This document shows, piece by piece, positions 23,785 to 36,179 of a stretch of 64,000 bases of DNA. The translations under genes were made by a program, and so were the position numbers. Each line of letters begins with the position of its first letter. Within the stretch, counting starts at the first letter, position 1. The stretch covers positions 62,001 to 126,000 of IMG/VR virus record IMGVR_UViG_3300047157_000197, one strand, 5' to 3'. Under the pieces are notes generated by a model that saw only the letters and a list, made by a program, of their open reading frames with translations, was not told the DNA's origin and searched no databases.

Positions 23785-25250
23785 AGTTAGGAGTTTGTGT
23801 TCCGTATAGAAATAGAGAAGCTCACTTAAAAGAGTTTATACCAAAAGTTGGAAAATATTTAGATGCACAAGGCATTGATTACTGTATTTATTTTGCACAC
23901 CAAGTTGATGATAAATTATTCAACAGAGGGGCAACAAAAAATGTTGCAGCAAAACACGCATTTGAAGATGGATGTGATTATATAGTTTGGCATGATATAG
24001 ATATGATACCAGAAGAAGGGTGTGATTATTCATTTCCTAAAAAAACACCAATACATATTGCAACTTCAATATCACAAATGGATTACAAATTAAAGTATGA
24101 AGAATACTTTGGTGGTGCGGTTTTATTTTCAAAAGAACAGGTAGAAAAAACCAATGGATATTCAAATGATTATTGGGATTGGGGAATGGAAGATGATGAT
24201 TTATTTTGGAGATGTGTATTAGAAGGATATGCAGATGATACCTATATGGATTATCCAACTGATGACCAAACCTATTTAAATTTTAATGGTTTAAATTCTT
24301 TTATTAAAATAGATAAAGATGCTAAATTAAGAAACGTAACATCTCGTTCTCACACAGTTTCAATATTAGTTCGAGCATATCAACAAGAAGATAAAGTTAA
24401 TATTTGGTTGGTAGGTGATGATGAACGAAGATTTTGTGAATATCCAATAATTCGTAGACCAGGATATGATTGGGGATTGAGTTATAATAATTCAAGAGCA
24501 TATACTGCACAACTTTGGGATAATGAAAAAAATCATTTATATCAATGGATAAAAAGATATGAAGGCCAATGGACTTGGATAACTTTAAAAGTAGATTCTG
24601 CAACTCAAAAAATACATTTTTATTTAAATGGAAAAGAATCAGATGCAAGACATGGTCATGGTACACAATCTCCATTGTCATATGAGAATAGATTAAAATC
24701 TTATGGAATGGGTGATTGGTATATTGGAACTACTACATCTGCAAGAAAGAATGATATCAATCGTTGGTTAAAGGGAGATATTGGAAAAGTTTATGTATGG
24801 AATCGTAATTTAAGTGATGAGGAAATAAAAGATATTCATAAAAATGTACCTGAAAATAAATTGGTACTTCATTATGATTTTAATTCAGAACAACAAAAAA
24901 ACTCACCCTATACTGCAGTTGATTTAACTGGCAATGGATTACATGGTAGTATAAGAAATGCAGAATTAAAAAAAGGAAAAATTAAAATTCCTTATACAAT
25001 AATCCCACATAGAATACCTGGAAAACTAAAATGTTTACCTCACAAAGATGAGGGGTTGGTAAAAAACAAAGATGGAAAAGAAGTTTGGGCAAAAGGAGAA
25101 ACAACTGCAAGAAACGAAAGACGATATGTTCTTCAAATGCAACAAGGTACTTGGGATTATAAATCTGATGGTATTAAACAATTAAAATATGAATTAGTTG
25201 GAATTGAGGAAATAACTCCAAAAGCAAAACTAATAAATGTTAAATTCTAA
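23781..25250 (+). CDS. GT7 galactosyltransferase-like enzyme with inserted LamG domain (paralog)
   Basis: VPYRNRE, FNRG, WHDID, YFGG, YWDWGMEDDDL; LamG insert. Confidence 0.85.
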   Translation: MKLGVCVPYRNREAHLKEFIPKVGKYLDAQGIDYCIYFAHQVDDKLFNRGATKNVAAKHAFEDGCDYIVWHDIDMIPEEGCDYSFPKKTPIHIATSISQMDYKLKYEEYFGGAVLFSKEQVEKTNGYSNDYWDWGMEDDDLFWRCVLEGYADDTYMDYPTDDQTYLNFNGLNSFIKIDKDAKLRNVTSRSHTVSILVRAYQQEDKVNIWLVGDDERRFCEYPIIRRPGYDWGLSYNNSRAYTAQLWDNEKNHLYQWIKRYEGQWTWITLKVDSATQKIHFYLNGKESDARHGHGTQSPLSYENRLKSYGMGDWYIGTTTSARKNDINRWLKGDIGKVYVWNRNLSDEEIKDIHKNVPENKLVLHYDFNSEQQKNSPYTAVDLTGNGLHGSIRNAELKKGKIKIPYTIIPHRIPGKLKCLPHKDEGLVKNKDGKEVWAKGETTARNERRYVLQMQQGTWDYKSDGIKQLKYELVGIEEITPKAKLINVKF

Positions 25251-25275: not shown

Positions 25276-26724
25276 ATGGCAGAATTAATAGCAAAACAAG
25301 AAGAAAAAAAGAGAAAAATTAACATAGATGACGATAGTCCATTTTACGTTGATATACGAACTTCACTAAACGATACAGGATCTGGTTTTTGTTTAGCTAA
25401 ATGGACACAAGTTACAATGCATTTGCAACTTGGACATACGCATTCTTGTCATCACCCAAAAACACACCAAATTCCATTAAGGGAATTAAAAAGAAATCCA
25501 ACTGCTCTTCACAATACAATGTATAAAAAGAGAAGAAGAAAAGAAATGTTGGAAGGACAACGACCTGAAGAATGTGATTATTGTTGGAATGTAGAAGATA
25601 GTTCTAATAGATTTTCAGATAGAACTTTTAAATCTGCTGAGAATTGGTCTTATCCGTATATGGATGAAATAAAACAATTAGGTTGGAGAGATGATTATAA
25701 TCCAAAATACGTTGAAGTTTCTTTTTCAAATGCATGTAATTTCAAATGTTCATATTGTGGACCTGCATTTTCAACTCAATGGATGGTAGAGGCTGAAAAA
25801 TATGGTGCATATCCAACAACAGATGGATTTAATGATATAGAGTATCTCAAGCTAGAAGGAAAAATGCCAATGCCAGTTACACAAGCAAATCCTTATGTAG
25901 ATGCTTTTTGGAATTGGTGGCCAAACCTTTACACCGATTTACATACTTTTAGAATTACAGGTGGAGAACCTTTAATGTCACAAGATACTTGGAAAGTTTT
26001 AGATTATATCTTAGAACACCCAAATCCAAATAAAAATTTAAATTTAGCAATTAACTCTAACTTAGGAGTACCTGATAAATTAGTTGATAGATTTATAGAA
26101 AAAGTACAAAAAATATGTGAGGAGGATAGAGTTAAAGAATTCGTAATCTTCACATCAGTAGATAGTTGGGGAGCACAAGCAGAATATATTAGAAATGGTT
26201 TAGAATTTAATAGATTTTGGGATAACTGTCATAAAGTTTTAGAAAAGTGTCCAAAGGTTATTTTAACTTATATGGTTACTTATAATGCATTATCAGTTCC
26301 AAACTATGACAAACTTATTAGAGGTGTTTATGATTTAAAAACACAATATGGTTCTGATGATAGATATTGGAATTCTGCTACATTTTTAGATACATCTTAT
26401 TTAAGACATCCAAAACATCAAACAGTTCAAGTATTAGAACCACATTGGGCAGATAAAATTTATGCAGATGCTCAGTTAGTAGATTTCTTAGGTGTTCCTT
26501 TATTTGAAAAAGAATATATCGGTTATTCTGATGTAGAGATTCAAAAATTAAAAAGAACATTTGATTGGATGAAATCACCAATACCGGAAAAACAACTTGA
26601 AACACAGAGAAGAAATTTTGGATATTATTTTAGAGCACACGATGAACGAAGAGGAACTGATTTTTGTGCAACATTCCCAGAATTAGAAGAATTTTATAGA
26701 AAATGCTTAGAAATTAAGATATGA
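25276..26724 (+). CDS. Radical SAM protein with N-terminal Twitch/SPASM-like domain
   Basis: CLAKW...HSCHH...CDYCW then CNFKCSYC, ITGGEP, INSN. Confidence 0.85.
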   Translation: MAELIAKQEEKKRKINIDDDSPFYVDIRTSLNDTGSGFCLAKWTQVTMHLQLGHTHSCHHPKTHQIPLRELKRNPTALHNTMYKKRRRKEMLEGQRPEECDYCWNVEDSSNRFSDRTFKSAENWSYPYMDEIKQLGWRDDYNPKYVEVSFSNACNFKCSYCGPAFSTQWMVEAEKYGAYPTTDGFNDIEYLKLEGKMPMPVTQANPYVDAFWNWWPNLYTDLHTFRITGGEPLMSQDTWKVLDYILEHPNPNKNLNLAINSNLGVPDKLVDRFIEKVQKICEEDRVKEFVIFTSVDSWGAQAEYIRNGLEFNRFWDNCHKVLEKCPKVILTYMVTYNALSVPNYDKLIRGVYDLKTQYGSDDRYWNSATFLDTSYLRHPKHQTVQVLEPHWADKIYADAQLVDFLGVPLFEKEYIGYSDVEIQKLKRTFDWMKSPIPEKQLETQRRNFGYYFRAHDERRGTDFCATFPELEEFYRKCLEIKI

Positions 26725-27455
26725 TAGAACTTACAGGAGACAACGCATTCTTTGTCCCACCAAAAAATAGATACGGATTATCTAAAAAAGAAACATTTGA
26801 TTTAACGGAAAAAGATTTTACATTTACTGTTAAAGTAAAAATTAATTGGAAATCAATGATACCTGGAACTGCAACTCACGAAGGTGGTATTGTTGCAAAA
26901 AACGGTAGACATTGTGGATTAAGTGCAATTAAAACTGGTGATAATCAATGTTACATAAAAGCACAATTTTGGACATGGGTGAGTAGAGAAGTGGGAGTTG
27001 AATTTCACGATACATGGATTGATGTAAAGGAAAATGAAGATTGGATGTCCATTGCAATGATTCATGATAAAAGTAAAAAAATAGTAACTTGTTATGTTGA
27101 TGGTCAAGAATCAAAAATTTCATATTCAGGTGAAATAATTGATTATAGAGATTCTTGGATTTGGATTGGGTGTAATAATTCACTTGATAGTTGTTCACCA
27201 GAACATAGAGGATTTCTTTCAGGCTCCATTAAACACCTATCTATTTTTGATAGTGCATTAAATATATCCGATATTGAAGAAACTTTTAAAATCGAAGAAT
27301 TTTCAGATATAGATTTTAGTAAATCTCCTTGTGGTATTTATTCTTTTAATCCAAAATGGCAAACACCTTATAAAGTTATGGATATTACAAATAATGGTAA
27401 TTCTATGATATTATTTGATAAAAAGTGGATGGCAACAGAAACACAATTATTATAA
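26721..27455 (+). CDS. Stand-alone LamG/ConA-like lectin-domain protein
   Basis: DFTFTVKVK, CYVDG, IWIG, GSIKHLSIFDSAL pattern. Confidence 0.7.
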   Translation: MIELTGDNAFFVPPKNRYGLSKKETFDLTEKDFTFTVKVKINWKSMIPGTATHEGGIVAKNGRHCGLSAIKTGDNQCYIKAQFWTWVSREVGVEFHDTWIDVKENEDWMSIAMIHDKSKKIVTCYVDGQESKISYSGEIIDYRDSWIWIGCNNSLDSCSPEHRGFLSGSIKHLSIFDSALNISDIEETFKIEEFSDIDFSKSPCGIYSFNPKWQTPYKVMDITNNGNSMILFDKKWMATETQLL

Positions 27456-27460
27456 CTCAA

Positions 27461-28888
27461 ATGAAAAAGTATATTCATTTTGTATATGATTTTAAATTTC
27501 CAAATGGTTACTTACAATTTGGATACACTAAAAGTACGATAAAAGATAATTTTTTTTATCAAACAGAAAATACTCAAGAAGATGTTGTTCTTTTAGCAAG
27601 TCCACATGCTCCCTCTAATTTACGACCACAAGTTGGTATGTTTGCTGATGAGTATGTTAGTACAAACAAAAATTGGAACAAATTGGGTGTAAATCAAATT
27701 CAAGATATTATCGATAGAAAACATTACGATTCTAAGAAAACTTATTTTTTTATCACTTTAGAAGCAACAACAATATCAAATTTTTTTGAATATTATTTAA
27801 ATCCTAATTTGAATTTTGATGATATAATATCTCCAAAACTTTTAAATTATTTTAAAACAAGAGATGAGTTTAAAATAATTTTAATGGATAATAGAGAAGG
27901 TAGTTATCCCCATGATGTAAAGTTATTTACTAAATTTAGTAAATGGTTGGATAAACATAATGTAAATGCTAATAATAAAATTATTATTTCAACTTGTAAT
28001 GAAAAAATAAATAATATCAAATTAAATGACAAAAGAATAGTTGTTTACAATAATGATTATTATGTTTATTATGCAGGTAAATTCATACAAGAATGTGAAG
28101 AACAAAATAATATAATTAGAGAACATGGTAAAGAGTATCAGTATTCATTACAAGAAAATTTAAAATTTAATAAAAAAGAAAAATATTTTTTAAATTATAA
28201 TAGAAATTCTGCAAGGTGGCATAGACCCTTTTTAGTAAATGAATTATATAAACATAATATTTTAGAGAAAGGTATAGTTTCATTATTAAAAACAGATGAT
28301 TTTGACAAGAATCTTGGTGAAATTAAAAATGATTTTGAAAACTATGATTTAAAAAATGGTTTAAAATTAAATAATACTGATTATAAAGAATTATATTCCA
28401 ATCATAAAAAATGGTATCCTTTAGTTATTGAAAATGCAAACGAAGAAGAAGTTGCGTGGTATCATAATTTTTTAAGTAGAAAGGATGAATATGAAAAAAC
28501 ATATTTTTCAATAGTTTCTGAAACAAATGCAACTAGTTGGTATCTATTTATAACAGAAAAAACATTAAAACCAATAATGAATTTACATCCATTTTTAATA
28601 AATGGAAATCCATATACAATAAAACATCTAAAAAAATTAGGATTTCAAACTTTTGATAAATGGTGGGATGAAAGTTATGATAATGAAACAAATTATAAAA
28701 AAAGAACAGAGTTGTTAGTAAAACAAATTGAAATTCTTTGTAATAAAACACATGAAGAATGGATAGTAATGTTACAAGAAATGCAACCAATTTTACATTA
28801 TAATAAAAATCTTTTAAAAGAAAAATATACTAGTAAATCTTATGAAAAAAATTTACTAAATCAATTTAATAAAAATACAATGCTATGA
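27461..28888 (+). CDS. Putative glycosyltransferase-like protein (ET...TEK..KP family, paralog 2)
   Basis: IVSET...FITEKTLKPIMNLHPF...GFQTFDKWWDESYD; likely start 27461 (track 27425). Confidence 0.5.
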   Translation: MKKYIHFVYDFKFPNGYLQFGYTKSTIKDNFFYQTENTQEDVVLLASPHAPSNLRPQVGMFADEYVSTNKNWNKLGVNQIQDIIDRKHYDSKKTYFFITLEATTISNFFEYYLNPNLNFDDIISPKLLNYFKTRDEFKIILMDNREGSYPHDVKLFTKFSKWLDKHNVNANNKIIISTCNEKINNIKLNDKRIVVYNNDYYVYYAGKFIQECEEQNNIIREHGKEYQYSLQENLKFNKKEKYFLNYNRNSARWHRPFLVNELYKHNILEKGIVSLLKTDDFDKNLGEIKNDFENYDLKNGLKLNNTDYKELYSNHKKWYPLVIENANEEEVAWYHNFLSRKDEYEKTYFSIVSETNATSWYLFITEKTLKPIMNLHPFLINGNPYTIKHLKKLGFQTFDKWWDESYDNETNYKKRTELLVKQIEILCNKTHEEWIVMLQEMQPILHYNKNLLKEKYTSKSYEKNLLNQFNKNTML

Positions 28889-29850
28889 AAATTCTAATCA
28901 CAGGTGGTTCAGGTTATTTAGGTTCAGTTATTACAGAGAAGTTATTAAATAAAAACTATGAAGTTACAATCTTAGATAACTTAATGTATAATCAAACATC
29001 ATCAATTACATTTACACATAACCCCAATTTTAATTTTATTTATGGAGATGTTAGAGATAAATCATTACTAAAATCATTAGTAAATACTTTTGATGTAATT
29101 ATACCACTTGCAGCGATTGTAGGATTTCCCGCATGTGATAGAGATAAAGATTTAGCAACTGCAATTAATTACGAGCACGTAAGATATATTTGTGAGTTAG
29201 TAAATGGAACAAAAATAAGGGTGGTTTATCCGAACACGAATAGTGGATATGGGATAGGAGAGAGTGGTGAGTGTACTGAAGAAAGTCCACTTAACCCAAT
29301 ATCACATTATGGTGTAACGAAAGTAAAAGCTGAAGGAGAGGTTCTTGGGATAGGAGGGATTTCTGTTAGATTAGCAACTGTATTTGGTACATCACCAAGA
29401 ATGAGAATGGATTTATTAGTAAACGAATTTGTTTACAAAGCCCTAACAGATAAATACATTACAATATTCGAAAAAGATTTTGTAAGAAATTACATTCATA
29501 TTAGAGATGTTGCAAATGTATTTTTATTTATGATTGAAAACTATGAAAAACATAGTGGAGAAGTTTTCAATGTAGGATTATCAGATGCCAATTTATCAAA
29601 AGAACAATTGGTAGAAAAAATAAAAGGATATGTACCTGATTTTGCAATAACATATTCAGATTATTATTCAGACCCTGATAAAAGAGATTATATAGTATCT
29701 AATGAAAAAATCGAATCAGTAGGTTGGGTTGCAGAGCATTCATTGGATAATGGAATAGAAGAATTAATTAAAACATATACCATTCTTATACAAGATTTAA
29801 GCTCTAAGTATAGAAATGGTTTCCCATTAGGTTATGGCAAAAGGACGTAG
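28885..29850 (+). CDS. NAD-dependent NDP-sugar epimerase/dehydratase (SDR)
   Basis: TGGSGYLG, YGVTK (YxxxK), RLATVFG, RNYIHIRD. Confidence 0.9.
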   Translation: MKILITGGSGYLGSVITEKLLNKNYEVTILDNLMYNQTSSITFTHNPNFNFIYGDVRDKSLLKSLVNTFDVIIPLAAIVGFPACDRDKDLATAINYEHVRYICELVNGTKIRVVYPNTNSGYGIGESGECTEESPLNPISHYGVTKVKAEGEVLGIGGISVRLATVFGTSPRMRMDLLVNEFVYKALTDKYITIFEKDFVRNYIHIRDVANVFLFMIENYEKHSGEVFNVGLSDANLSKEQLVEKIKGYVPDFAITYSDYYSDPDKRDYIVSNEKIESVGWVAEHSLDNGIEELIKTYTILIQDLSSKYRNGFPLGYGKRT

Positions 29851-30418
29851 TATATTTTATAAACAAAGAGATTGGGATGATTTTCATTTTTATCATGGGT
29901 CAACTTTAAATGAAGTTAAAGTAGTACAACCATCGATATATTATGAACAACGAGGTTCAATATCTACAACATATCATTCGGATTATTATGATAGAATCTT
30001 ACCAGCAAACGATAGAAATAATGGTTTAAAATTTAAACACGATAGATTTTCAAAATCAAAAAAGAATGTGTTGAGAGGATTACATTATGATGATAAAACT
30101 TGGAAACTTGTTAATTGCTTACATGGTAAGATTTATTTAGTTGTATTAGATTTAAGACCTAAACAAGATAACTATGGTAAATGGGAATCATTTATCCTCT
30201 CACCAGAAACAGCAACACAAGTTTTAATTCCACCAATGTTTGCAAACGGTCATTATGTATTTGAAGATGATTCTATCTTTAGTTATAAATTGGCATACCA
30301 AGGGGAATTTAACGATGTAGATAAACAACAAACAATAAAATGGAATAGTACAAAGTTCAACATCGATTGGCCGTGTACAACTCCTATAATATCAAAAAGA
30401 GATGCAAATGGAAATTAA
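29834..30418 (+). CDS. rmlC: dTDP-4-dehydrorhamnose 3,5-epimerase-like cupin
   Basis: EQRG, SKSKKNVLRGLHY, KLV.C..G.IY.V..DLR, IPPMFANG, ISKRD. Confidence 0.85.
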   Translation: MAKGRSIFYKQRDWDDFHFYHGSTLNEVKVVQPSIYYEQRGSISTTYHSDYYDRILPANDRNNGLKFKHDRFSKSKKNVLRGLHYDDKTWKLVNCLHGKIYLVVLDLRPKQDNYGKWESFILSPETATQVLIPPMFANGHYVFEDDSIFSYKLAYQGEFNDVDKQQTIKWNSTKFNIDWPCTTPIISKRDANGN

Positions 30419-31046
30419 AAATTTAGATTATCACAAAGATAGATGGGTAGATGGCAACTGGTCAAAACAAGATTTAATTGATTTTGAGGATGATATTATT
30501 TCTCATTGGGAAAATGGAGAAATCACAGGCCCTATACATTTATCAAATGGTAATGAAGAACAACTTATAAAAATATTTAACAAAATTGGTATTAATGATT
30601 GGGTATTTTCAACTTGGAGGTCTCATTATCATGCACTACTACATGGTGTAGAACCACAAGTGTTAAAACAAAAAATATTAGAAGGAAAATCTATTACAAT
30701 AATTGATAAGGAATCTAATTTCTACTCATCAGCAATTGTAACAGGTATTTTACCTATTGCATTAGGTGTTGCAAAAGGAATAAAAGAAAAAGGTAGTGAT
30801 GAAAAGGTATGGTGTTTTATTGGAGATATGACATTTGAAACTGGTATATTCTATGAAGTACACAAGTACGCTAGAAATTTTAATTTACCACTTTATTTTG
30901 TAGTAGAAGATAATGAAGTTTCTACCAATACACCAACTTCACATACTTGGAATGAAATTCAAAGAGAAATTCCAGAAGATGTAATTTATTACAAATATAA
31001 ATCTAAATATCCTCACTATGGGACAGGAAAATGGGTAGTATTTTAA
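30402..31046 (+). CDS. TPP-dependent E1-alpha-like subunit (short)
   Basis: GPIHLSNGNE, STWRSHYH, GDMTFETG...VEDN TPP motif. Confidence 0.85.
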   Translation: MQMEIKNLDYHKDRWVDGNWSKQDLIDFEDDIISHWENGEITGPIHLSNGNEEQLIKIFNKIGINDWVFSTWRSHYHALLHGVEPQVLKQKILEGKSITIIDKESNFYSSAIVTGILPIALGVAKGIKEKGSDEKVWCFIGDMTFETGIFYEVHKYARNFNLPLYFVVEDNEVSTNTPTSHTWNEIQREIPEDVIYYKYKSKYPHYGTGKWVVF

Positions 31047-32233
31047 ATTTTGTTTTTTTGTTTGATGAAGTCTCTCAACCTAGTTGGTATATGAATGGGC
31101 CATTTTCTGATTATATTTCAATAAACTATAATTACACAGTTGGTATTGAGTTTGATAGTAATCTTAATAACATTATTGTATTAGAAACACACGAACATTT
31201 CAAAGGAACTCATCAAAATTTAGAAACACAAATTTTTGGAACAACAATACTTGAAATATTGAAAAACAATGACGTAAAAATAATATTTGCTTCAATCGCA
31301 GACCCACCTGATGATAGAGAAACTGTTAAATTAAAAAATAAAATTGAAAAAGCAGGATTAACTAATAAAGTTTATTATATAGAAAGTTCTATAAACAATC
31401 GAAATAAAAAGAATACATTTTGTTATCACCATTTCTTAGAAGAACCAGTTGTTCATAAATTAAAGAATGGAGAATGGAACTTTTTTAATAATTATACCAA
31501 TGAATTGGGATATAAAAGTACAGATATTCAAGAAACTGAAATAAATGAATATAGAGAAAAGAAATTTTTATCCTTTAATAGAACAATAGATAAGTTTAAT
31601 AGATGGAGTTTATTACACACTTACTTAGAAAATGATTTTTCGGATTCATATTTTAGTTTTTTAAACTTTTCAAATGATTACTCATCAAAAATAACTCATG
31701 AAAATGCACCAATATATTGTAAAACTCCTAGATTAGCATTTGAAGAATATACTAGTAGAATACCAATAGAACTTGATACACAAAATATAAAATCAAATAC
31801 TGATTTATCAAGATTTAAAACAAGTGATACTTTTAAAAAGAATTTGTTTTTAAACTCATGTATCAATATTGTAACTGAAACAACATTTAGAGAAAATGAA
31901 GTGTTCCTATCAGAAAAAATTATAAAGCCTCTTATAGGATATCAACCATTTATTGTTCTAGGCCCATATCAATATCTTAAAGAATTAAAAAATTTAGGAT
32001 ATAAAACTTTTTCTGAATTTTGGGATGAAAGTTATGATGAAATAGAAAACGCAGAAGAACGATATTTTGCAGTAGAAAAAATAATATTAGAATTAAATAA
32101 AAAAAATATTGATGAAATAAACGAAATTTATCAAAAAATTAAAAATATATGTATATATAATAGAAAGGTATTTGATAATTACGATATAGATTCGATTCCA
32201 AATATAATAAAACAAATAGAAAATGAAAAATAA
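31031..32233 (+). CDS. Putative glycosyltransferase-like protein (paralog 3)
   Basis: FLSFNR...IVTETTF...FLSEKIIKPLIGYQPF...GYKTFSEFWDESYD. Confidence 0.5.
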   Translation: MGSILNFVFLFDEVSQPSWYMNGPFSDYISINYNYTVGIEFDSNLNNIIVLETHEHFKGTHQNLETQIFGTTILEILKNNDVKIIFASIADPPDDRETVKLKNKIEKAGLTNKVYYIESSINNRNKKNTFCYHHFLEEPVVHKLKNGEWNFFNNYTNELGYKSTDIQETEINEYREKKFLSFNRTIDKFNRWSLLHTYLENDFSDSYFSFLNFSNDYSSKITHENAPIYCKTPRLAFEEYTSRIPIELDTQNIKSNTDLSRFKTSDTFKKNLFLNSCINIVTETTFRENEVFLSEKIIKPLIGYQPFIVLGPYQYLKELKNLGYKTFSEFWDESYDEIENAEERYFAVEKIILELNKKNIDEINEIYQKIKNICIYNRKVFDNYDIDSIPNIIKQIENEK

Positions 32234-33188
32234 AAAGGTTTTGATAACAGGTGCCAACGGATTGGTTGGTAATTACATGGTTCAAAAATGTATCGATAGA
32301 GGTGCATTTGTAACGGCGGTTGATATAAGACAACCAGACAATCAACTAGAAAAATATAAAGATGAAAATTACCAATTCATTAATGCAGATTTAAGAGAGT
32401 TCTCCTCGTGTAAAAGAGTTGTAGAGGGTCAAGATATCATATTTCATATTGCAGGTGTTAAGGGTTCTCCTAAGAGGGCAATGGAACAACCTGCTGATTA
32501 CTTTGTACCTATGTTACAATTTAATACCAATATGATGGAAGCAGCAAGATTAGAAGATGTAGAATGGTATGTGTACACTTCAACTGTTGGAGTATATCAA
32601 CCAGCTGAGGTATTTTATGAAGATGATGTATGGAAAACATTCCCATCAGAAAAAGATAAGTATGCTGGATGGGCAAAGAGATTAGGTGAATTACAAGCTG
32701 AAGTTTATTCTGTATCATTTGATTGGAATAAGGCATCGGTTGTAAGACCAGCAAACATTTATGGTAGACATGATAACTTCGGACCAGAATCAACAGTAAT
32801 TGCATCACTTATTAAAAGATTATTTGGTGAAAAGGAACATCCACTAATTTGTTGGGGAGATGGTTCACCAATCAGAGATTTTATTTATGCTGGTGATGTT
32901 GCTGATGGTATCATAAAATCATACGAACAAAAATTAACACAACCAATCAACTTAGGTAGTGGTACTGGTGTTACCATTAGAGAACTTGCTGAAACTCTTG
33001 TAGATATTTACGAAGAAATGTATGGAGTTAAGGTTGGTATCGAATGGGATAGTACAAAACCAAATGGAGATGCTAAAAGATTGATGAGTACAGAAAGAGC
33101 AGAATCTTTCGGAGTTATTCAACAAGTATCTTTAAGAGAAGGATTAAAAGAAACAATAGATTATTATTTAAACGAATTTACAAAATAA
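32223..33188 (+). CDS. NAD-dependent NDP-sugar epimerase/reductase (GDP-fucose-synthase-like SDR)
   Basis: TGANGLVG, RPANIYG, WGDGSPIRDFIY, NLGSG. Confidence 0.85.
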   Translation: MKNKKVLITGANGLVGNYMVQKCIDRGAFVTAVDIRQPDNQLEKYKDENYQFINADLREFSSCKRVVEGQDIIFHIAGVKGSPKRAMEQPADYFVPMLQFNTNMMEAARLEDVEWYVYTSTVGVYQPAEVFYEDDVWKTFPSEKDKYAGWAKRLGELQAEVYSVSFDWNKASVVRPANIYGRHDNFGPESTVIASLIKRLFGEKEHPLICWGDGSPIRDFIYAGDVADGIIKSYEQKLTQPINLGSGTGVTIRELAETLVDIYEEMYGVKVGIEWDSTKPNGDAKRLMSTERAESFGVIQQVSLREGLKETIDYYLNEFTK

Positions 33189-33194
33189 AAAGTT

Positions 33195-34187
33195 ATGAAA
33201 AAAACAGACAAAATATTAGTTACAGGAGCAAGTGGATTTATAGGTTCACGATTAGTTAAATCACTTTATGAAGGTGGATTTACAGATATAAGAGCAACAT
33301 CTTGGAGTAGAGATTTAAGAAATGATTTCGAAGGATGTGAAAATGTAGAATTTTTAAAAGGAAATTTACAAGATGCAGATTTTTGTGAAATCGTATCAAA
33401 AGATATTGATGTAATTTTTCATTGTGCAGCTAACACTTCAAATGCTTTGGATACAAAATTTAATCCATTACTTCATGTTACACCAAATATTGAAATGAAT
33501 GTAAATCTTATGGAACAAAGTTGGAGAAACAAAGTTCGTAAGTTTATGTTTATATCATCTAATACAACATATCCTGATATGGGAGATGTTCCTTGTACTG
33601 AAGATATAGAAGTTCAAACACCAGATATTGTACCTGTATATAAAGCAGTGGGTAATATGAAAAGATATTGTGAAACACTTTGTGATTTCTTTTCAAATCA
33701 GATTCACGACCCAATGCAGTGTATTATTATCAGACCTTCTAATGCATTTGGACCAAATGATAAATTTGATTTTGAAAAATGTCATGTTACACCAGCAAAC
33801 ATTAGAAAAGTAGCAGATAATTTAAATCCTATTCCTGTATGGGGAGATGGAACTGAAGTAAGAGATGTTATTCATGTTGATGATATGGTAGGTGGGTTTA
33901 TTACAGTTGCAGAAAAAGTTGATACATACGATATTTACAATGTATCCTATGGTTCAGGTTATACTGTAATGGAAGTACTTGATAAAATTAAAGAAATAGA
34001 AGGAAACACAAATCCGGTAGAATTTGTTAATAACAAAGCACCGATGATACCTGTAAGACTTCTTGGTAACGATAAACTTGTTGCACTTGGATGGAAACCT
34101 AAATATGATTTAGATAGTGGATTGAGAGATGCACTTAAGTGGTATAAAGCAAACAAAGACCAGTTTAATCCAAATTCAAGACCATAA
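33195..34187 (+). CDS. NAD-dependent NDP-sugar epimerase/reductase (SDR)
   Basis: TGASGFIG, RPSNAFG, WGDGTEVRDVIHVDD. Confidence 0.85.
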   Translation: MKKTDKILVTGASGFIGSRLVKSLYEGGFTDIRATSWSRDLRNDFEGCENVEFLKGNLQDADFCEIVSKDIDVIFHCAANTSNALDTKFNPLLHVTPNIEMNVNLMEQSWRNKVRKFMFISSNTTYPDMGDVPCTEDIEVQTPDIVPVYKAVGNMKRYCETLCDFFSNQIHDPMQCIIIRPSNAFGPNDKFDFEKCHVTPANIRKVADNLNPIPVWGDGTEVRDVIHVDDMVGGFITVAEKVDTYDIYNVSYGSGYTVMEVLDKIKEIEGNTNPVEFVNNKAPMIPVRLLGNDKLVALGWKPKYDLDSGLRDALKWYKANKDQFNPNSRP

Positions 34188-34738
34188 TGGCAGAACCAAA
34201 ATTTACACCATATTTAGATGCTTTAACAGAAGCAATGAAATTAAGTATGGAAAATGATAACACAATATTCATCGGACAGCAGATAGTTTATTATGGCAAC
34301 CCAATGAGTAAAACCATTGAAGGATTGCCAAAAGAACGAATGATTGAAACTCCTGTAATGGAAGAAGTTCAAATGGGAATGACTTTAGGGTTAGCAATGT
34401 ATGGTCATTCAGTAATTAGTTTTTATCCAAGATGGGATTTTGTTATATGTGCTGCAAATCAATTAGTAAATCATTTAGATAAAATAAATGTAATGTCTGA
34501 TGGTGCATGGAATCCAAATATAATTATTCGAGTTGGTAAGGGAAGTGATACACCACTTGACCCTGGTCATCAACACAAAGCAGATTATACAGAAGAATTT
34601 TCATCTATGTTAAAACATACAAATGTAGTAAAACTTGATACTCATGAAAAAATACTTCCAGCTTATAAAGAAGCATTAACAAATGGTGGTATTTGGGTGA
34701 TGGTTGAATATCCTCAATTATACTATGAAGATAAATAG
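34187..34738 (+). CDS. TPP-dependent E1-beta/transketolase pyrimidine-binding subunit (short)
   Basis: ETPVMEE.QMG..LGLA, CAANQLVNH, PGHQH. Confidence 0.85.
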   Translation: MAEPKFTPYLDALTEAMKLSMENDNTIFIGQQIVYYGNPMSKTIEGLPKERMIETPVMEEVQMGMTLGLAMYGHSVISFYPRWDFVICAANQLVNHLDKINVMSDGAWNPNIIIRVGKGSDTPLDPGHQHKADYTEEFSSMLKHTNVVKLDTHEKILPAYKEALTNGGIWVMVEYPQLYYEDK

Positions 34739-36179
34739 AGTATTTGATATTATTGGACCACGAGGACCAGTGCCAAATGGTTTAAATTGGAATTTTACTG
34801 ATACGTTTTGGGATTACGATTTTTATATCTATCATAAACTTATTGATAAATTTAATGAATCATATACACAAATATCTGTTTATGATTGTAATTTAAATTT
34901 ACCACAAGATATTATAAAAAACTATCATATAAGTGATTTACATTTTGATGAAAATGCAAAAGAAATCACAAACAAAAAAGAAAATTATTTTTTTACCATA
35001 CATCCATTTGGTAACATTCACATTTCTACTGGATTAGATACGAGCTATCACGAAGGTAGACATAGTTTTGATTTTATATCAAAGAAAACAAAATCATATT
35101 CTAAAGCTTCAAATTTTTGGTTTATATATGATTATAGTAGTGAAGGTGATATTAACGAATATATATTTGAATCATTACATCTTGCGTGTGAACGAAACAA
35201 TATAAATCCCTCAAAAATTATTGTAATAACTGCATCTGAAAATACTTTTGATATTTACAAAAAATATTTAGATAAAAATCCACAAGATAATTTATTATAT
35301 ACAGCATTTTATCCATGGTCACTTCTTGGAAAAGCAAAAGATACAAATTCCATTTTGTTTGAAAATAAAATAATAAATTTTCATGGGTTTAAAAATAAAA
35401 ATTCTGTAATGTTAGATGAAGAATTTGATAATCTAACTCAACGAGAATCTCATGCACTTTGTTTAAATAGAAGATTGGCACCTCATAGAATAATATTAAT
35501 AAGTTGGTTACTTGAAACTAAACTTTTTGATAAAACAAAAACTTCTTTTGATATAAATCTGTTACACTCACATGATGCCGGATTAGATTTAATATCAGGC
35601 AGTGGACATGATGAAGAGGGCTATATTAAAACACAGCCTATTAAAAATCTAATAATGGGTGGTTATCGAAAAATGATAAAGAAAGAAAAAAGTATTATAG
35701 ATTTTGAAGATATAGAAAATGTTTGGGGATTTGCATTTGAAAACTCAGAAAACTATAAATCAACCTATTTTTCAATTGTAACAGAAACTCTTTTTTATGA
35801 GTTTGGAAATTATTTATCTGAAAAAACTTGGAAACCAATTGCACACTTACATCCATTTATTTTTGTTGGTAGACCTGGTATGTTGAAGTTTTTACATAGT
35901 TTAGGATTTAAAACTTTTAGTGAGTATTGGGATGAAAGTTATGATACTGTCGAATCAAACTCATTAAGAATGGAAAAGATATTTGAAGTTACTACAACAC
36001 TATTATCTAAAAGTAAAGATGAGTGGGATTTATTAAATAAAAAATTAAAACCTATACTTATTTATAACAGAAATTTACTTTTATCATTTCAAGAAGAAAA
36101 GGTAGGTAATGCTTATAAAAATAAATTATTTAATTTAATTAAACATGAACCTAATCAAGAAAATTATTACTTACTTTAA
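34725..36179 (+). CDS. Putative glycosyltransferase-like protein (paralog 4)
   Basis: LCLNRR...IVTETLF...YLSEKTWKPIAHLHPF...GFKTFSEYWDESYD; likely start 34725 (track 34704). Confidence 0.5.
   Translation: MKINRVFDIIGPRGPVPNGLNWNFTDTFWDYDFYIYHKLIDKFNESYTQISVYDCNLNLPQDIIKNYHISDLHFDENAKEITNKKENYFFTIHPFGNIHISTGLDTSYHEGRHSFDFISKKTKSYSKASNFWFIYDYSSEGDINEYIFESLHLACERNNINPSKIIVITASENTFDIYKKYLDKNPQDNLLYTAFYPWSLLGKAKDTNSILFENKIINFHGFKNKNSVMLDEEFDNLTQRESHALCLNRRLAPHRIILISWLLETKLFDKTKTSFDINLLHSHDAGLDLISGSGHDEEGYIKTQPIKNLIMGGYRKMIKKEKSIIDFEDIENVWGFAFENSENYKSTYFSIVTETLFYEFGNYLSEKTWKPIAHLHPFIFVGRPGMLKFLHSLGFKTFSEYWDESYDTVESNSLRMEKIFEVTTTLLSKSKDEWDLLNKKLKPILIYNRNLLLSFQEEKVGNAYKNKLFNLIKHEPNQENYYLL

What the first reader, a model, noticed from the sequence alone, without database searches (positions are those of the whole stretch)
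28885..34738. Likely pathway to a two-carbon-branched sugar
A short E1-alpha (214 aa) and an E1-beta lacking its C-terminal domain (183 aa) are interleaved with RmlC and three SDRs, with no E2/E3 in the window. TPP enzymes are known to add a pyruvate-derived C2 unit to NDP-4-keto-deoxysugars (YerE in yersiniose; E1-like AviB1/B2 for avilamycin eurekanate). Inference: the phage makes a yersiniose/eurekanate-like branched octose rather than supplementing pyruvate dehydrogenase.
Basis: partly seen in the sequence, partly recalled or inferred. Interest (0 to 1): 0.6.

Follow-up and report, generated by a model that had tools for sequence, protein, structure and literature searches.

The report
Mini thiamine enzyme in phage heptose island
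A very common 276-kb marine phage carries a stripped-down two-piece thiamine enzyme inside an operon that oxidises and reshapes a seven-carbon sugar, so it most likely builds an unusual carbon-branched sugar rather than feeding energy metabolism, though no one has yet tested this.

Summary
Window 28885-34738 is one tightly overlapping + strand operon: SDR, RmlC-like cupin, short E1-alpha (214 aa), a 400-aa protein, two SDRs and an E1-beta with only its Pyr domain (183 aa). The complete 276-kb phage genome has no E2 or lipoyl domain.

- **Not pyruvate dehydrogenase: well supported.** Both subunits lack the parts that classical E1 uses with E2. They keep the ThDP/Mg motif and the catalytic Glu, and a complex model supports that they bind each other.
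- **A distinct "mini-E1" family.** It has thousands of marine homologues. The two halves are adjacent in SAR11, SAR116, Verrucomicrobia and Gammaproteobacteria genomes, and fused in cyanophages S-SM2 and P-TIM68.
- **Constant company of a keto-sugar-forming enzyme.** All 55 fully flanked phage loci and 6 of 7 bacterial loci have one.
- **The scaffold is probably a heptose, not a 6-deoxyhexose.** The first SDR is about 57% identical to PDB 6VO6, which I recall as C. jejuni Cj1427. The cupin best matches GDP-4-keto-heptose epimerases. Relatives sit beside GmhA and heptose kinase genes.

A pyruvate-derived C2 branch on a GDP-4-keto-heptose (a nonose, not a yersiniose-like octose) is the best reading, but it is inferred only. 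I rate it a new variant of a known kind.

The parts
20095..20871 (+). Methyltransferase, at the upstream edge of the glycan island
   Evidence: Pfam Methyltransf_24, E 2.3e-11. Conserved at the same relative position in most related phage loci.
20864..21712 (+). Possible GT2-like glycosyltransferase (weak)
   Evidence: Pfam Glyco_tranf_2_4, E 1.3e-4, below the cut-off. Syntenic in relatives.
21953..23374 (+). GT7 (beta-1,4-galactosyltransferase-like) glycosyltransferase fused to a LamG lectin-like domain
   Evidence: Pfam Glyco_transf_7N E 8e-19, Glyco_transf_7C E 3.5e-16, Laminin_G_3 E 9e-12.
23371..23784 (+). Small cytidylyltransferase-like nucleotidyltransferase, resembling the HldE C-terminal domain or TagD
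   Evidence: Pfam CTP_transf_like E 2.6e-11. NCBIfam rfaE_dom_II (heptose 1-phosphate adenylyltransferase) E 6e-18 and glycerol-3-phosphate cytidylyltransferase E 4e-15, both below cut-off. 35% identical to the S-SM2 nucleotidyltransferase.
23781..25250 (+). Second GT7 plus LamG glycosyltransferase
   Evidence: Pfam Glyco_transf_7C E 2.3e-19, Glyco_transf_7N E 6.6e-17, Laminin_G_3 E 2.5e-9.
25276..26724 (+). Twitch-domain radical SAM protein; substrate unknown
   Evidence: NCBIfam NF033640 N_Twi_rSAM, 349.8 bits against a cut-off of 170. Syntenic in most relatives.
26721..27455 (+). LamG / concanavalin-like lectin-domain protein
   Evidence: Pfam Laminin_G_3, E 9e-9.
27425..28888 (+). Putative GT-B glycosyltransferase, a paralogue of the 400-aa protein in its C-terminal domain
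   Evidence: BLASTP to 31031-32233: 33% identity over 113 residues, E 5e-15. No Pfam, NCBIfam or PHROG hit.
28885..29850 (+). SDR1: nucleotide-heptose C4 dehydrogenase (Cj1427-like). Inferred to make the 4-keto sugar.
   Evidence: PDB 6vo6_A/6vo8: E 8e-106, 357 bits, about 57% identity over residues 2-301. The next best PDB hit is only E 1e-18. Orthologues at 47-54% identity lie next to the TPP pair in 5 of 7 bacterial loci and in 52 of 55 fully flanked phage loci.
29834..30418 (+). RmlC-fold cupin: 4-keto-heptose C3/C5 epimerase (Cj1430-like)
   Evidence: PDB 8db5/8dco GDP-D-glycero-4-keto-D-lyxo-heptose 3,5-epimerase, E 1.4e-45. True dTDP-4-dehydrorhamnose epimerases reach only E 8.5e-24 or weaker. 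It overlaps SDR1 and TPP-alpha by 17 nt each. It abuts TPP-alpha in 50 of 72 related loci.
30402..31046 (+). Mini-E1 alpha: the ThDP diphosphate-binding (PP) domain only, 214 aa
   Evidence: E1_dh 52.7 bits; PDH_E1_alph_y E 4.5e-23; phrog_34187 E 3e-55 at profile positions 5-198 of 405. G141-D142-M143 ... E169-D170-N171 is a ThDP/Mg motif. Across 30 diverse family members H46, D66, G122, G141, L162, N171, H205 and G207 are invariant. The protein ends 43 residues after the motif, whereas human E1 alpha continues for about 155 more.
31031..32233 (+). GT-B fold glycosyltransferase-like protein with a GT10-like C-terminal nucleotide-sugar domain
   Evidence: AlphaFold2 model: pLDDT 86.6, pTM 0.86. 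The top Foldseek PDB hits shown at E below 2.4e-3 are nearly all GT-B glycosyltransferases, including SenB, H. pylori alpha-1,3-fucosyltransferase, phage glycosyltransferases and TarM, but TM-scores are only about 0.3-0.45. The Atlas lead is Glyco_transf_10.
32223..33188 (+). SDR2: reductase or epimerase related to GDP-L-fucose synthase and GDP-4-keto-sugar reductases
   Evidence: NCBIfam GDPFucSynFcl E 6.6e-36, below cut-off. PDB GDP-fucose synthetase 1e6u, E 6.5e-25.
33195..34187 (+). SDR3: a second GDP-fucose-synthase-like extended SDR
   Evidence: NCBIfam GDPFucSynFcl E 4.9e-40. PDB 8rdg E 3e-28 and GDP-fucose synthetase 1bsv E 1.6e-26.
34187..34738 (+). Mini-E1 beta: the pyrimidine-binding (Pyr) domain only, 183 aa, with no C-terminal domain
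   Evidence: NF006667 PDH E1 beta E 2.9e-14, positions 7-139 of 327. phrog_34187 E 1.8e-23, positions 238-401. PDB 1ik6 E 2.4e-8. E59 (the catalytic Glu position) and Q129-H130 (the E1 beta His128 position) are at least 95% conserved in 64 distinct homologues of mostly 171-186 aa. The complex model with the alpha piece scores ipSAE 0.86 against a best control of 0.00.
34704..36179 (+). Putative GT-B glycosyltransferase, a third paralogue
   Evidence: BLASTP to 31031-32233: 39% identity over 133 residues, E 4e-22. It follows TPP-beta in most related phage loci.

Best explanation
The region is the sugar-tailoring core of an 18-kb phage glycan island. The proposed pathway has five steps.

1. SDR1, a Cj1427-type dehydrogenase, oxidises C4 of a nucleotide-activated D-glycero-D-manno-heptose to the 4-keto sugar. 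The nucleotide is most likely GDP, and the sugar comes from the host or from dispersed phage genes.
2. The RmlC-fold cupin epimerises C3 and/or C5.
3. The two short proteins assemble into a minimal E1-like ThDP enzyme, with the PP domain on alpha, the Pyr domain on beta, and the active site at their interface. This enzyme decarboxylates a 2-oxo acid, most likely pyruvate, and adds the resulting C2 carbanion to the sugar's keto carbon. The product is a 4-C-acetyl tertiary alcohol.
4. One of the two GDP-fucose-synthase-like SDRs reduces the branch carbonyl. Alternatively it reduces unbranched 4-keto sugar to a second, epimeric heptose.
5. The interleaved GT-B-like proteins and the upstream GT7-LamG enzymes transfer the products to an unknown acceptor, which could be virion proteins or the host envelope.

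Shown here: gene content, operon structure, conservation of catalytic residues, absence of E2, predicted alpha-beta binding, and co-occurrence with keto-sugar-forming enzymes across phages and bacteria.

Inferred: the heptose substrate (by homology), the C2 transfer, its donor, the position attacked, and the fate of the sugar.
For: 1. **The pair looks catalytically competent and self-contained.**
   - The ThDP/Mg motif G141-D142...N171 is present, and H46, H205 and the near-invariant R73 and H75 are conserved in alpha.
   - Beta keeps the catalytic Glu E59 and Q129-H130.
   - The ESMFold2 complex scores ipSAE 0.86 against a best control of 0.00. That mark was reached by 51 of 78 solved complexes and 2 of 108 mismatched pairs. 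The runs agree in at least 98% of contacts and the partner pLDDT is at least 88. The interface includes beta residues 56-72, around E59.
2. **The two halves are one functional unit.** They are fused in S-SM2, P-TIM68 and metagenomic proteins and adjacent in 7 bacterial genomes.
3. **It is not a PDH.** The genome has no E2 or lipoyl domain. Beta lacks the Transketolase_C domain and alpha lacks about 120 C-terminal residues.
4. **A keto-sugar-forming enzyme is always nearby.**
   - All 55 phage loci with at least 9 kb on both flanks carry a Cj1427-like C4 dehydrogenase (52) or a GDP-mannose-type 4,6-dehydratase (3).
   - Six of 7 bacterial loci do too; the seventh is a 6-kb contig.
   - RmlC overlaps TPP-alpha by 17 nt here and abuts it in 50 of 72 loci.
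5. **There is a heptose link.** See SDR1 against 6VO6 and the cupin against GDP-4-keto-heptose epimerases. Neighbours in relatives include SIS (GmhA-like), GHMP or PfkB kinases, an HldD-like SDR and cytidylyltransferase-like genes.
6. **There is precedent.** E1 alpha/beta-type (alphaKADH2) enzymes add a pyruvate-derived C2 branch to C3 or C4 of keto sugars. KbDH-alpha/beta was tested in vitro, and AviB1/B2, Pau11/12 and aldgamycin are further examples (PMC12247030, PMC4753412).
7. **The operon turns up in RNA libraries.** Contigs from four seawater metatranscriptome libraries cover it at 99% identity or more, including both TPP genes.
Against: - No biochemical data exist for any member of this short family.
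In a quick tree the family is a separate clade from classical E1 alpha.
- The two GDP-fucose-synthase-like SDRs, SDR1 and the cupin already make a complete C. jejuni-type pathway (oxidise, epimerise, reduce). That pathway needs no ThDP enzyme, so the pair's step is not dictated by the pathway logic.
- In bacteria and cyanophages the pair is also directly next to heptose kinase and isomerase genes. This fits equally well a role before nucleotide activation.
- The phage has no GmhA, GHMP kinase or obvious GmhB, so the heptose supply is unproven.
- The identity of 6VO6 as Cj1427 rests on my memory. The PDB title in the tool output says only 'putative sugar-nucleotide epimerase/dehydratase'.
- RNA-library contigs may include carried-over DNA.
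Confidence: 0.5

Rival explanations
1. The pair acts on a nucleotide-activated keto sugar, but with different chemistry from a pyruvate-derived C2 branch at C4. Options include a different donor (hydroxypyruvate or a ketose giving a hydroxyacetyl branch, as proposed for split transketolases in miharamycin, or a longer 2-oxo acid), a different position (C3, or C6 via an HldD-like transient ketone), or a branch that is then transaminated or methylated.
For: - Known alphaKADH2 enzymes branch at C3 or C4, and the branch is variously reduced, methylated or transaminated. Split transketolases are proposed to transfer hydroxyacetyl (PMC12247030).
- In 5 of 7 bacterial loci the pair is flanked by a DegT aminotransferase and a B12-radical SAM enzyme.
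- In cyanophages the partner SDR is HldD-like, with C6 chemistry (E 1.5e-38), and a class III/P-like Zn alcohol dehydrogenase abuts the fused enzyme.
Against: - Characterised alphaKADH2 members appear restricted to C2 units from pyruvate.
- In this phage the adjacent enzymes are C4-specific by homology.
- Sequence alone cannot distinguish donors.
Confidence: 0.25
2. The pair acts before nucleotide activation, as a minimal transketolase- or DXS-like enzyme. It would make or extend a ketose phosphate (for example sedoheptulose 7-phosphate, or an octulose phosphate) that feeds the GmhA isomerase and the heptose kinase.
For: - The pair or the fused gene is directly next to a sugar kinase of two unrelated folds: PfkB in P-TIM68 and L086, and GHMP in L092, L094, L090, L093 and L095.
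- In a SAR11 genome it sits between a SIS isomerase and the kinase.
- There are weak Pfam hits to DXP_synthase_N (26.9 bits).
- GenBank annotates the cyanophage gene as 'transketolase central region-containing protein'.
Against: - Both halves score best against E1 alpha/beta models, not transketolase. No characterised member of that superfamily uses ketose phosphates, to my knowledge.
- The jumbo-phage lineage keeps the pair welded to the RmlC-like epimerase and the C4 dehydrogenase. It has no SIS isomerase, and its kinase lies about 170 kb away.
- Sedoheptulose 7-phosphate is already abundant in any host with a pentose phosphate or Calvin cycle.
Confidence: 0.15
3. The pair is an auxiliary metabolic gene that supplements host pyruvate, acetoin or branched-chain 2-oxo acid dehydrogenase by working with the host's E2 and E3.
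For: JGI annotates homologues as 'pyruvate dehydrogenase E1 component alpha subunit'. The best named family hits are PDH E1 alpha and beta.
Against: - Beta lacks the whole C-terminal domain, and alpha lacks about 120 C-terminal residues.
- The genome has no E2 or lipoyl domain.
- The genes are embedded in, and co-inherited with, nucleotide-sugar genes in phages and in five bacterial lineages.
- Bacterial genomes that carry the pair hold it in glycan loci, not next to E2/E3.
Confidence: 0.03

Closest known systems
alphaKADH2-type sugar-branching enzymes of actinomycete natural products (AviB1/AviB2 of avilamycin, Pau11/Pau12 of paulomycin, KbDH-alpha/beta of kibdelomycin, the aldgamycin E1 pair)
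   Same: - A two-chain E1 alpha/beta-type ThDP enzyme encoded inside a deoxy/keto-sugar gene cluster with no E2.
- Proposed, and for KbDH shown on sugar analogues, to add a pyruvate-derived C2 unit to a sugar ketone. Reduction or other tailoring of the branch follows (PMC12247030, PMC4753412).
   Different: - The known ones are described as E1/alphaKADH2 pairs in actinomycete antibiotic clusters and act on deoxy-keto hexoses or pentoses.
- Here alpha has 214 aa and beta 183 aa. The Transketolase_C domain and the C-terminal third of alpha are missing.
- The family forms its own clade, occurs in phages and marine Gram-negative bacteria, and is linked to heptose genes.
- Sequence relationship to AviB1 or KbDH was not tested.
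YerE (yersiniose A) and YerE-like enzymes (ErwE, JanthE)
   Same: The same proposed chemistry: ThDP-dependent transfer of activated acetaldehyde from pyruvate to C4 of an NDP-4-keto sugar in a surface polysaccharide pathway.
   Different: YerE is a single-chain flavoprotein of the decarboxylase (AHAS-like) superfamily that acts on CDP-3,6-dideoxy-4-keto-glucose. The phage enzyme is an E1-type heteromer and has no such domains.
Campylobacter jejuni capsular heptose modification pathway (Cj1427 C4 dehydrogenase, Cj1430 C3/C5 epimerase, Cj1428 C4 reductase)
   Same: SDR1, the cupin and the two GDP-fucose-synthase-like SDRs match the three enzyme types. The matches are about 57% identity to 6VO6, E 1e-45 to the GDP-4-keto-heptose epimerases, and E 1e-24 to 1e-28 to GDP-fucose synthase-like reductases (pathway in PMC10680097).
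   Different: - The C. jejuni clusters contain no ThDP enzyme; 'thiamine' occurs nowhere in PMC10680097.
- The phage lacks GmhA, HddA and an evident GmhB.
- The phage adds the mini-E1 pair and three GT-B-like genes inside the operon.
phrog_34187, the 'transketolase central region-containing protein' of cyanophages S-SM2 (SSM2_198) and P-TIM68
   Same: A direct homologue: 43-44% identity to alpha and 27-35% to beta. It has the same two domains in the same order and also lies in a heptose/'LPS' gene cluster.
   Different: - It is fused into one polypeptide of about 400 aa.
- Its neighbours are an ADP-heptose-type set (SIS isomerase, PfkB kinase, small nucleotidyltransferase, HldD-like SDR) plus a Zn alcohol dehydrogenase. 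There is no Cj1427/RmlC pair.
- Its function is unknown, and the clusters were noted only as possible 'LPS genes' (PMC3037559).
Pyruvate dehydrogenase, acetoin dehydrogenase and branched-chain 2-oxo acid dehydrogenase E1 alpha2beta2
   Same: Best-scoring named families; shared PP and Pyr domains, ThDP motif, catalytic Glu, and the beta His128-equivalent.
   Different: The phage pair has no beta C-terminal domain, a truncated alpha, no E2 or E3, and lies in a glycan-locus context.

Membership tests
E1 alpha/beta (alphaKADH2) ThDP enzyme superfamily | PP domain on the alpha chain with the GDG-X(24-30)-N ThDP/Mg2+ motif | tested here: met
   G141-D142-M143 ... E169-D170-N171. G141 and N171 are invariant and D142 at least 90% conserved in 30 diverse members. 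The third position is Met rather than Gly in this phage. E1_dh scores 52.7 bits against a cut-off of 22.
E1 alpha/beta (alphaKADH2) ThDP enzyme superfamily | Pyr domain on a separate beta chain with the cofactor-activating glutamate | tested here: met
   E59 aligns with the Glu of the E1 beta 'TP..E' motif in 1ik6 and 6cer. It is at least 95% conserved in 64 distinct homologues.
E1 alpha/beta (alphaKADH2) ThDP enzyme superfamily | Alpha and beta form a complex with the active site at the interface | tested here: met
   This is a prediction only. ipSAE is 0.86 against a best control of 0.00; that mark was reached by 51 of 78 solved complexes and 2 of 108 mismatches. The runs agree in at least 98% of contacts and partner pLDDT is at least 88. 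Because solved E1 complexes exist, the pass may reflect likeness to them. Natural fusions of the two halves support it independently.
E1 alpha/beta (alphaKADH2) ThDP enzyme superfamily | Beta C-terminal (Transketolase_C) domain and a full-length alpha of about 320-370 aa | tested here: not met
   Beta has 183 aa and matches only positions 7-139 of a 327-position E1 beta model. Alpha has 214 aa and matches positions 6-171 of 300. Family-wide lengths are about 195-255 aa for alpha and 171-186 aa for beta.
Sugar-branching alphaKADH2 enzymes (AviB1/B2, KbDH-alpha/beta type) | Encoded in a cluster with an enzyme that generates an NDP-keto sugar, with no E2 | tested here: met
   A C4 dehydrogenase or 4,6-dehydratase is present in all 55 fully flanked phage loci and in 6 of 7 bacterial loci. 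The genome has no E2 or lipoyl domain.
Sugar-branching alphaKADH2 enzymes (AviB1/B2, KbDH-alpha/beta type) | Transfers a pyruvate-derived C2 unit to a sugar ketone | not testable with these tools
   This needs enzymology (LC-MS and NMR with 13C-pyruvate).
Sugar-branching alphaKADH2 enzymes (AviB1/B2, KbDH-alpha/beta type) | Sequence clade shared with characterised members | not tested
   No tool returned sequences of AviB1, Pau11 or KbDH. The short family is separated from 30 classical E1 alpha by a branch with SH-aLRT 99 in a quick tree. A classical-size E1 alpha from a bacterial sugar locus (L092) sits on a very long branch.
Pyruvate dehydrogenase complex E1 | Works with a lipoylated E2 (and E3), which docks on the beta C-terminal domains (established knowledge for heterotetrameric E1) | tested here: not met
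   The complete genome has no PF00198 or PF00364 match, and the beta C-terminal domain is absent. Use of a host E2 cannot be formally excluded by sequence.
Transketolase / DXS | Transketolase_N or DXP_synthase_N PP domain, Pyr domain and C-terminal domain in one chain (or a split pair of about 270 and 310 aa) | tested here: not met
   There is no Transketolase_N hit. DXP_synthase_N scores only 26.9 bits against 52.7 for E1_dh. No C-terminal domain is present.
YerE-like ThDP flavoenzymes | Single-chain enzyme of the decarboxylase (AHAS-like) ThDP superfamily (PMC12247030); the TPP_enzyme_N / middle / TPP_enzyme_C Pfam architecture is my own knowledge | tested here: not met
   There is only a weak TPP_enzyme_C hit on alpha (23.2 bits) and no TPP_enzyme_N or TPP_enzyme_M hit. 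The enzyme is a two-chain E1-type protein.
C. jejuni-type GDP-heptose modification pathway | Cj1427-type C4 dehydrogenase, Cj1430-type C3/C5 epimerase and GDP-fucose-synthase-like C4 reductase | tested here: met
   Matches: 6vo6 E 8e-106; 8db5/8dco E 1e-45; GDP-fucose synthase-like E 1e-24 to 1e-28. That 6VO6 is Cj1427 is my recollection, not a tool statement.
C. jejuni-type GDP-heptose modification pathway | GDP-heptose supply genes (GmhA, HddA, GmhB, HddC) in the same genome | tested here: inconclusive
   The phage has no SIS isomerase and no GHMP kinase. It does have a PfkB kinase 44% identical to the cyanophage heptose-cluster kinase. It also has two HldE-C-like nucleotidyltransferases and a HAD-NTP_transferase fusion elsewhere. 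Supply by the host is possible.

The most novel reading that the evidence does not exclude
A previously unrecognised class of minimal two-domain ThDP carboligase may exist. It has the E1 PP and Pyr domains only and occurs either split or fused. It would add carbon branches to keto-heptose nucleotides and so produce C-branched nine-carbon sugars. Such sugars would decorate SAR11, SAR116 and other abundant marine bacteria, and the virions or infected cells of the jumbo phages and cyanophages that carry the same module. If so, genes now annotated as 'pyruvate dehydrogenase E1' in marine viromes are glycan-diversification genes in a phage-host surface arms race, not carbon-metabolism genes.
Probability: 0.4. 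Interest if true: 0.75.

Novelty: new variant of a known kind. Interest (0 to 1): 0.62.

Why it matters
- **Annotation.** Homologues are labelled 'pyruvate dehydrogenase E1 alpha' or 'transketolase' in public data, and 6299 90%-identity clusters match at E of 1e-5 or better. Read as central-carbon auxiliary metabolic genes, they would distort models of viral reprogramming in the ocean.
- **Enzymology.** This would be the smallest E1-type ThDP enzyme architecture known to me. It would also be the first link between ThDP carboligation and heptose (rather than deoxyhexose) nucleotide sugars. Tertiary-alcohol-forming ThDP enzymes are sought as biocatalysts (PMC12247030).
- **Ecology.** The same module sits in glycan loci of SAR11 and other dominant marine bacteria and in their likely phages. 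This points to an unexplored, chemically unusual surface sugar at the phage-host interface.
- **Testability.** Cultured systems exist for the fused form, namely cyanophages S-SM2 and P-TIM68.

Tried and rejected
- **Megablast of the region against 50,697 phage records:** no match. Only protein-level relatives were found.
- **Phosphonate route rejected.** I considered a phosphonopyruvate/sulfopyruvate-decarboxylase-like minimal ThDP enzyme. The domain order is PP then Pyr, the models that match are E1-type, and the genome has no PEP mutase.
- **PDH supplementation rejected**.
- **Pathway genes sought in the phage genome:**
  - SIS/GmhA and GHMP kinase: absent.
  - PfkB kinase and an NTP_transferase fusion: found far from the operon.
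- **Confirming in the literature that PDB 6VO6/6VO8 is Cj1427:**
  - PMC7509852 and PMC7500870 are not held.
  - Full-text searches for the codes returned only irrelevant papers.
  - The identification therefore stays marked as recollection.
- **KbDH primary paper:** not in the library.
- **AviB1, Pau11 and KbDH sequences:** none could be obtained from the tools, so no direct comparison or joint tree was made.
- **Careful tree search:** did not finish in 300 s, so only the quick tree is reported.
- **Contexts of P0207 and P0256:** the contigs were too short to be informative.
- **Atlas search of the 400-aa protein:** gave only phage-specific unnamed clusters and a weak GT10 lead. The fold search then supported GT-B.

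Full report
**What is there.** The window is bases 62001-126000 of a single 275,970-bp virus record that CheckV rates 100% complete. GC content is about 29% and nearly all coding is on one strand. The record is a T4-like jumbo myovirus. It has a primase, an SbcC/gp46-like nuclease, a long-tail-fibre protein (14276-16291), a large terminase (42909-44501) and a portal (44964-46700).

The finding's coordinates hold seven + strand ORFs whose starts and stops overlap by 1-17 nt or are 6 nt apart. They are an extended SDR, an RmlC-fold cupin, a 214-aa E1-alpha-like protein, a 400-aa protein, two more extended SDRs and a 183-aa E1-beta-like protein.

- The alpha piece covers only the ThDP diphosphate-binding domain. 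It matches E1_dh profile positions 6-171 of 300 and ends 43 residues after the Mg-binding Asn.
- The beta piece covers only the pyrimidine-binding domain. It matches positions 7-139 of a 327-position E1 beta model and has no Transketolase_C domain.
- No E2 catalytic domain or lipoyl domain occurs in the whole genome, and there is no second E1.

**The two pieces are one enzyme.**
- PHROG family 34187 has 405 positions. It matches the alpha piece at 5-198 (E 3e-55) and the beta piece at 238-401 (E 2e-23).
- Its members include single 380-400-aa proteins of Synechococcus phage S-SM2 and Prochlorococcus phage P-TIM68, annotated 'transketolase central region-containing protein'.
- Further fused forms occur in metagenomes (P0134, P0191).
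- Among 30 diverse alpha homologues, H46, D66, G122, G141, L162, N171, H205 and G207 are invariant. They define a G-D-x ... E-D-N ThDP/Mg motif and a C-terminal Y-P-H-x-G-x-G motif.
- In 64 distinct beta homologues of mostly 171-186 aa, the cofactor-activating Glu (E59) and Q129-H130 (the position of E1 beta His128) are at least 95% conserved.
- A complex prediction gives ipSAE 0.86 against a best control of 0.00. That mark was reached by 51 of 78 solved complexes and 2 of 108 mismatched pairs. The runs agree in at least 98% of contacts and partner pLDDT is at least 88. The interface is centred on beta residues 56-72, around E59. Because E1 complexes have been solved, this shows likeness rather than proof.

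**It is a large, distinct family.**
- The word search found 6299 90%-identity clusters at E of 1e-5 or better. The best 120 are all at least 82% identical, and many come from Tara and other marine samples. JGI names some of them 'pyruvate dehydrogenase E1 component alpha subunit'.
- The exhaustive search over 50%-identity representatives found 116 clusters at E of 1e-30 or better. Nearly all are 195-255 aa, with a few fusions.
- Some homologues carry an intein or a LAGLIDADG domain, and one is fused to an APH-type kinase.
- In a quick maximum-likelihood tree, the short and fused forms lie on one side of a branch with SH-aLRT 99, apart from 30 classical E1 alpha proteins. Fused forms are nested among split ones. 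The careful search did not finish.

**Context in related phages.** I fetched 80 IMG/VR loci whose alpha homologues are 65-89% identical.
- Beta is present in 69 of the 73 loci with at least 9 kb downstream. It lies 1-9 kb from alpha, with variable genes inserted between.
- The RmlC-like gene lies within 2.5 kb upstream in 69 of 72 loci and abuts or overlaps alpha in 50 of 72.
- All 55 loci with at least 9 kb on both flanks contain an enzyme that makes a 4-keto sugar. It is an orthologue of SDR1 in 52 loci and a GDP-mannose-type 4,6-dehydratase in 3 (GDP_Man_Dehyd, 252 bits).

These phages are related to one another, so the counts show lineage-wide retention through much rearrangement. They are not independent events.

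**Context in bacteria gives independent support.** A genome scan found seven bacterial records with alpha 45-53% identical and beta directly downstream. They are two Pelagibacteraceae single-cell genomes, a SAR116 single-cell genome, two Verrucomicrobia MAGs, a Gammaproteobacteria MAG and a 588-kb contig of an uncultured bacterium.
- Five have an SDR1 orthologue (47-54% identity) within about 6 kb.
- One has a 4,6-dehydratase plus an RmlC-like gene.
- The seventh is only a 6-kb contig.
- All seven have a GHMP kinase within 2 kb, and five have a DegT aminotransferase and a B12-radical SAM gene beside the pair.

The SAR11 locus L094 is clearly cellular, because SufBD, SufS and glutamine synthetase flank it. 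Its gene order is GT4, SIS isomerase, alpha, beta, GHMP kinase, DegT, B12-rSAM, RmlC-like, C4 dehydrogenase, one unannotated gene on the opposite strand, then GT2.

The 588-kb contig (L092) adds a sugar C-methyltransferase, an aldo-keto reductase, and a second, classical-size E1 alpha/beta pair of 310 and 312 aa.

**Which sugar.**
- SDR1 matches PDB 6VO6/6VO8 at E 8e-106, with about 57% identity over 300 residues. The next PDB hit is only E 1e-18. The tool gives the title 'putative sugar-nucleotide epimerase/dehydratase'. [quoted passage not shown] I could not confirm this in the held literature. The enzyme's function is described in PMC10680097.
- Independently, the cupin's eight best PDB matches are C. 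jejuni capsular-heptose C3 or C3/C5 epimerases (E 1e-45 to 1e-40), five of them titled as GDP-D-glycero-heptose enzymes. True RmlC enzymes start at E 8.5e-24.
- SDR2 and SDR3 resemble GDP-L-fucose synthase and related GDP-4-keto-sugar reductases.
- This operon has no 4,6-dehydratase.
- The fused cyanophage genes sit in ADP-heptose-type sets: SIS isomerase, PfkB kinase, small cytidylyltransferase-like nucleotidyltransferase, and an HldD-like SDR (E 1.5e-38). A Zn alcohol dehydrogenase is also present.
- Elsewhere the window's own genome has a PfkB kinase 44% identical to the S-SM2 one, two HldE-C-like nucleotidyltransferases and a HAD-NTP_transferase fusion. It has no SIS isomerase and no GHMP kinase.

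**The rest of the island.**
- The 400-aa protein between alpha and SDR2 models confidently (pLDDT 86.6). The top Foldseek PDB hits shown at E below 2.4e-3 are nearly all GT-B glycosyltransferases, including the GT10 alpha-1,3-fucosyltransferase that uses a GDP-sugar. TM-scores are only about 0.3-0.45.
- The 487-aa and 491-aa proteins that flank the operon share its C-terminal domain.
- Upstream lie two GT7-LamG fusions, a LamG protein, a twitch radical SAM protein, a small nucleotidyltransferase, a weak GT2-like protein and a methyltransferase.

The whole island (about 20.1-36.2 kb) sits between tail-fibre genes and the terminase.

**Mechanism.** The best-supported reading has four steps:
1. 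C4 oxidation by SDR1.
2. C3/C5 epimerisation by the cupin.
3. ThDP-dependent addition of a 2-oxo-acid-derived C2 unit to the keto carbon by the mini-E1.
4. Reduction of the branch carbonyl, or of unbranched 4-keto sugar, by SDR2 and SDR3, followed by transfer by the GT-B and GT7 enzymes.

The precedent is solid. E1 alpha/beta-type (alphaKADH2) enzymes are the accepted C2-branching enzymes at C3 or C4 of keto sugars in avilamycin, paulomycin, aldgamycin, kosinostatin and kibdelomycin. KbDH-alpha/beta has been shown in vitro to use pyruvate and sugar-like ketones, and about 120 such gene clusters are known (PMC12247030, PMC4753412).

Shown here: the architecture, conserved catalytic residues, absence of E2, and strict association with keto-sugar-forming enzymes.

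Inferred: donor, position, product and acceptor of glycosylation.

I put this at 0.5. The main rivals are different carboligation chemistry on the nucleotide sugar (0.25), a transketolase/DXS-like role before nucleotide activation, suggested by the recurrent adjacency to kinases and an isomerase (0.15), and PDH supplementation (0.03).

**Occurrence and expression.** Near-identical copies of the 5.9-kb stretch occur in seawater metagenomes of at least 13 studies, some of which may be the source. Six seawater metatranscriptome runs hold 57-81% of its sampled words. Contigs from four RNA libraries cover most of the operon at 99% identity or more, including both ThDP genes. Contigs cannot show strand or exclude DNA carry-over.

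**Novelty.** The chemistry proposed is known. Three things are new, if the proposal is right: the minimal two-domain architecture, the heptose context, and the distribution in abundant marine phages and SAR11-type bacteria. Cyanophage 'LPS clusters' containing the fused gene were noted in 2010 without functional assignment (PMC3037559). I found no paper describing this family. I therefore rate it a new variant of a known kind, with interest 0.62.

Noticed in passing
window 36306-41513 (+): A 1735-aa ORF directly downstream of the island combines an N-terminal cytidylyltransferase-like domain, an HD domain and a CCA-adding/poly(A) polymerase head domain (phrog_2244 tRNA nucleotidyltransferase, E 1e-53). 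This is an unusually large multi-domain nucleotidyltransferase.
   Followed up: no
window 21953-23374 and 23781-25250 (+): Two paralogous proteins fuse a GT7 (animal beta-1,4-galactosyltransferase-like) catalytic domain to a LamG lectin-like domain. A free LamG protein follows at 26721-27455. Their acceptor is unknown.
   Followed up: no
window 25276-26724 (+): A twitch-domain radical SAM protein (NF033640, 350 bits) is conserved within the island in most related phages. A weak paralogue lies near 201.7 kb of the genome. Its role in sugar tailoring is unexplained.
   Followed up: partly
proteins P0158, P0175, P0207 (metagenomic homologues of the alpha piece): One alpha homologue is interrupted by an intein, one carries a LAGLIDADG domain, and one is fused to an APH-type phosphotransferase domain. 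The contig holding the kinase fusion was too short to show any context.
   Followed up: partly
G000:C1 about 209,000-217,000 (locus L084): The same phage has a second nucleotide-sugar island. It holds an SDR (best hits HldD, LegB and RmlB-like), a UDP-glucose/GDP-mannose dehydrogenase-like protein, a GT1-like protein, a HAD(beta-PGM-like)-NTP_transferase fusion, a second small nucleotidyltransferase, a PseC-like DegT aminotransferase and a GNAT.
   Followed up: partly
loci L090, L091, L093, L094, L095 (bacterial genomes): A conserved bacterial module recurs in SAR11, SAR116, Verrucomicrobia and Gammaproteobacteria glycan loci. It comprises GHMP kinase, mini-E1 alpha, mini-E1 beta, DegT aminotransferase and a B12-radical SAM enzyme, with or without a Cj1427-like dehydrogenase, RmlC and a SIS isomerase. 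It suggests a heavily tailored heptose-derived sugar in these bacteria.
   Followed up: partly
locus L092:611-4723: The same sugar locus of a 588-kb bacterial contig also holds an NDP-sugar C-methyltransferase (Methyltransf_14/13) and a second, classical-size but very divergent E1 alpha/beta pair (310 and 312 aa, with Transketolase_C). One glycan cluster thus has two ThDP pairs.
   Followed up: partly
window 27425-28888, 31031-32233, 34704-36179; also G000:C1 about 13.9-14.7 kb, 67.1 kb and 242.3 kb: The GT-B-like C-terminal domain (about 130 aa) is a multi-copy family in this genome, with weaker matches outside the island.
   Followed up: partly
locus L040:1-12157 (related phage): A sub-lineage replaces the C4 dehydrogenase with a GDP-mannose-type 4,6-dehydratase. 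It carries a PfkB kinase, a 2OG-Fe(II) oxygenase, DUF5672 and a GDSL-like protein next to RmlC, alpha, one SDR and beta. This is a more compact version of the module.
   Followed up: partly
window 8929-18804 (+): Very large ORFs (1794, 671 and 837 aa), including a long-tail-fibre distal-subunit-like protein, lie immediately upstream of the glycan island. The position between fibre genes and the terminase may hint that virion proteins are the glycosylation target.
   Followed up: no
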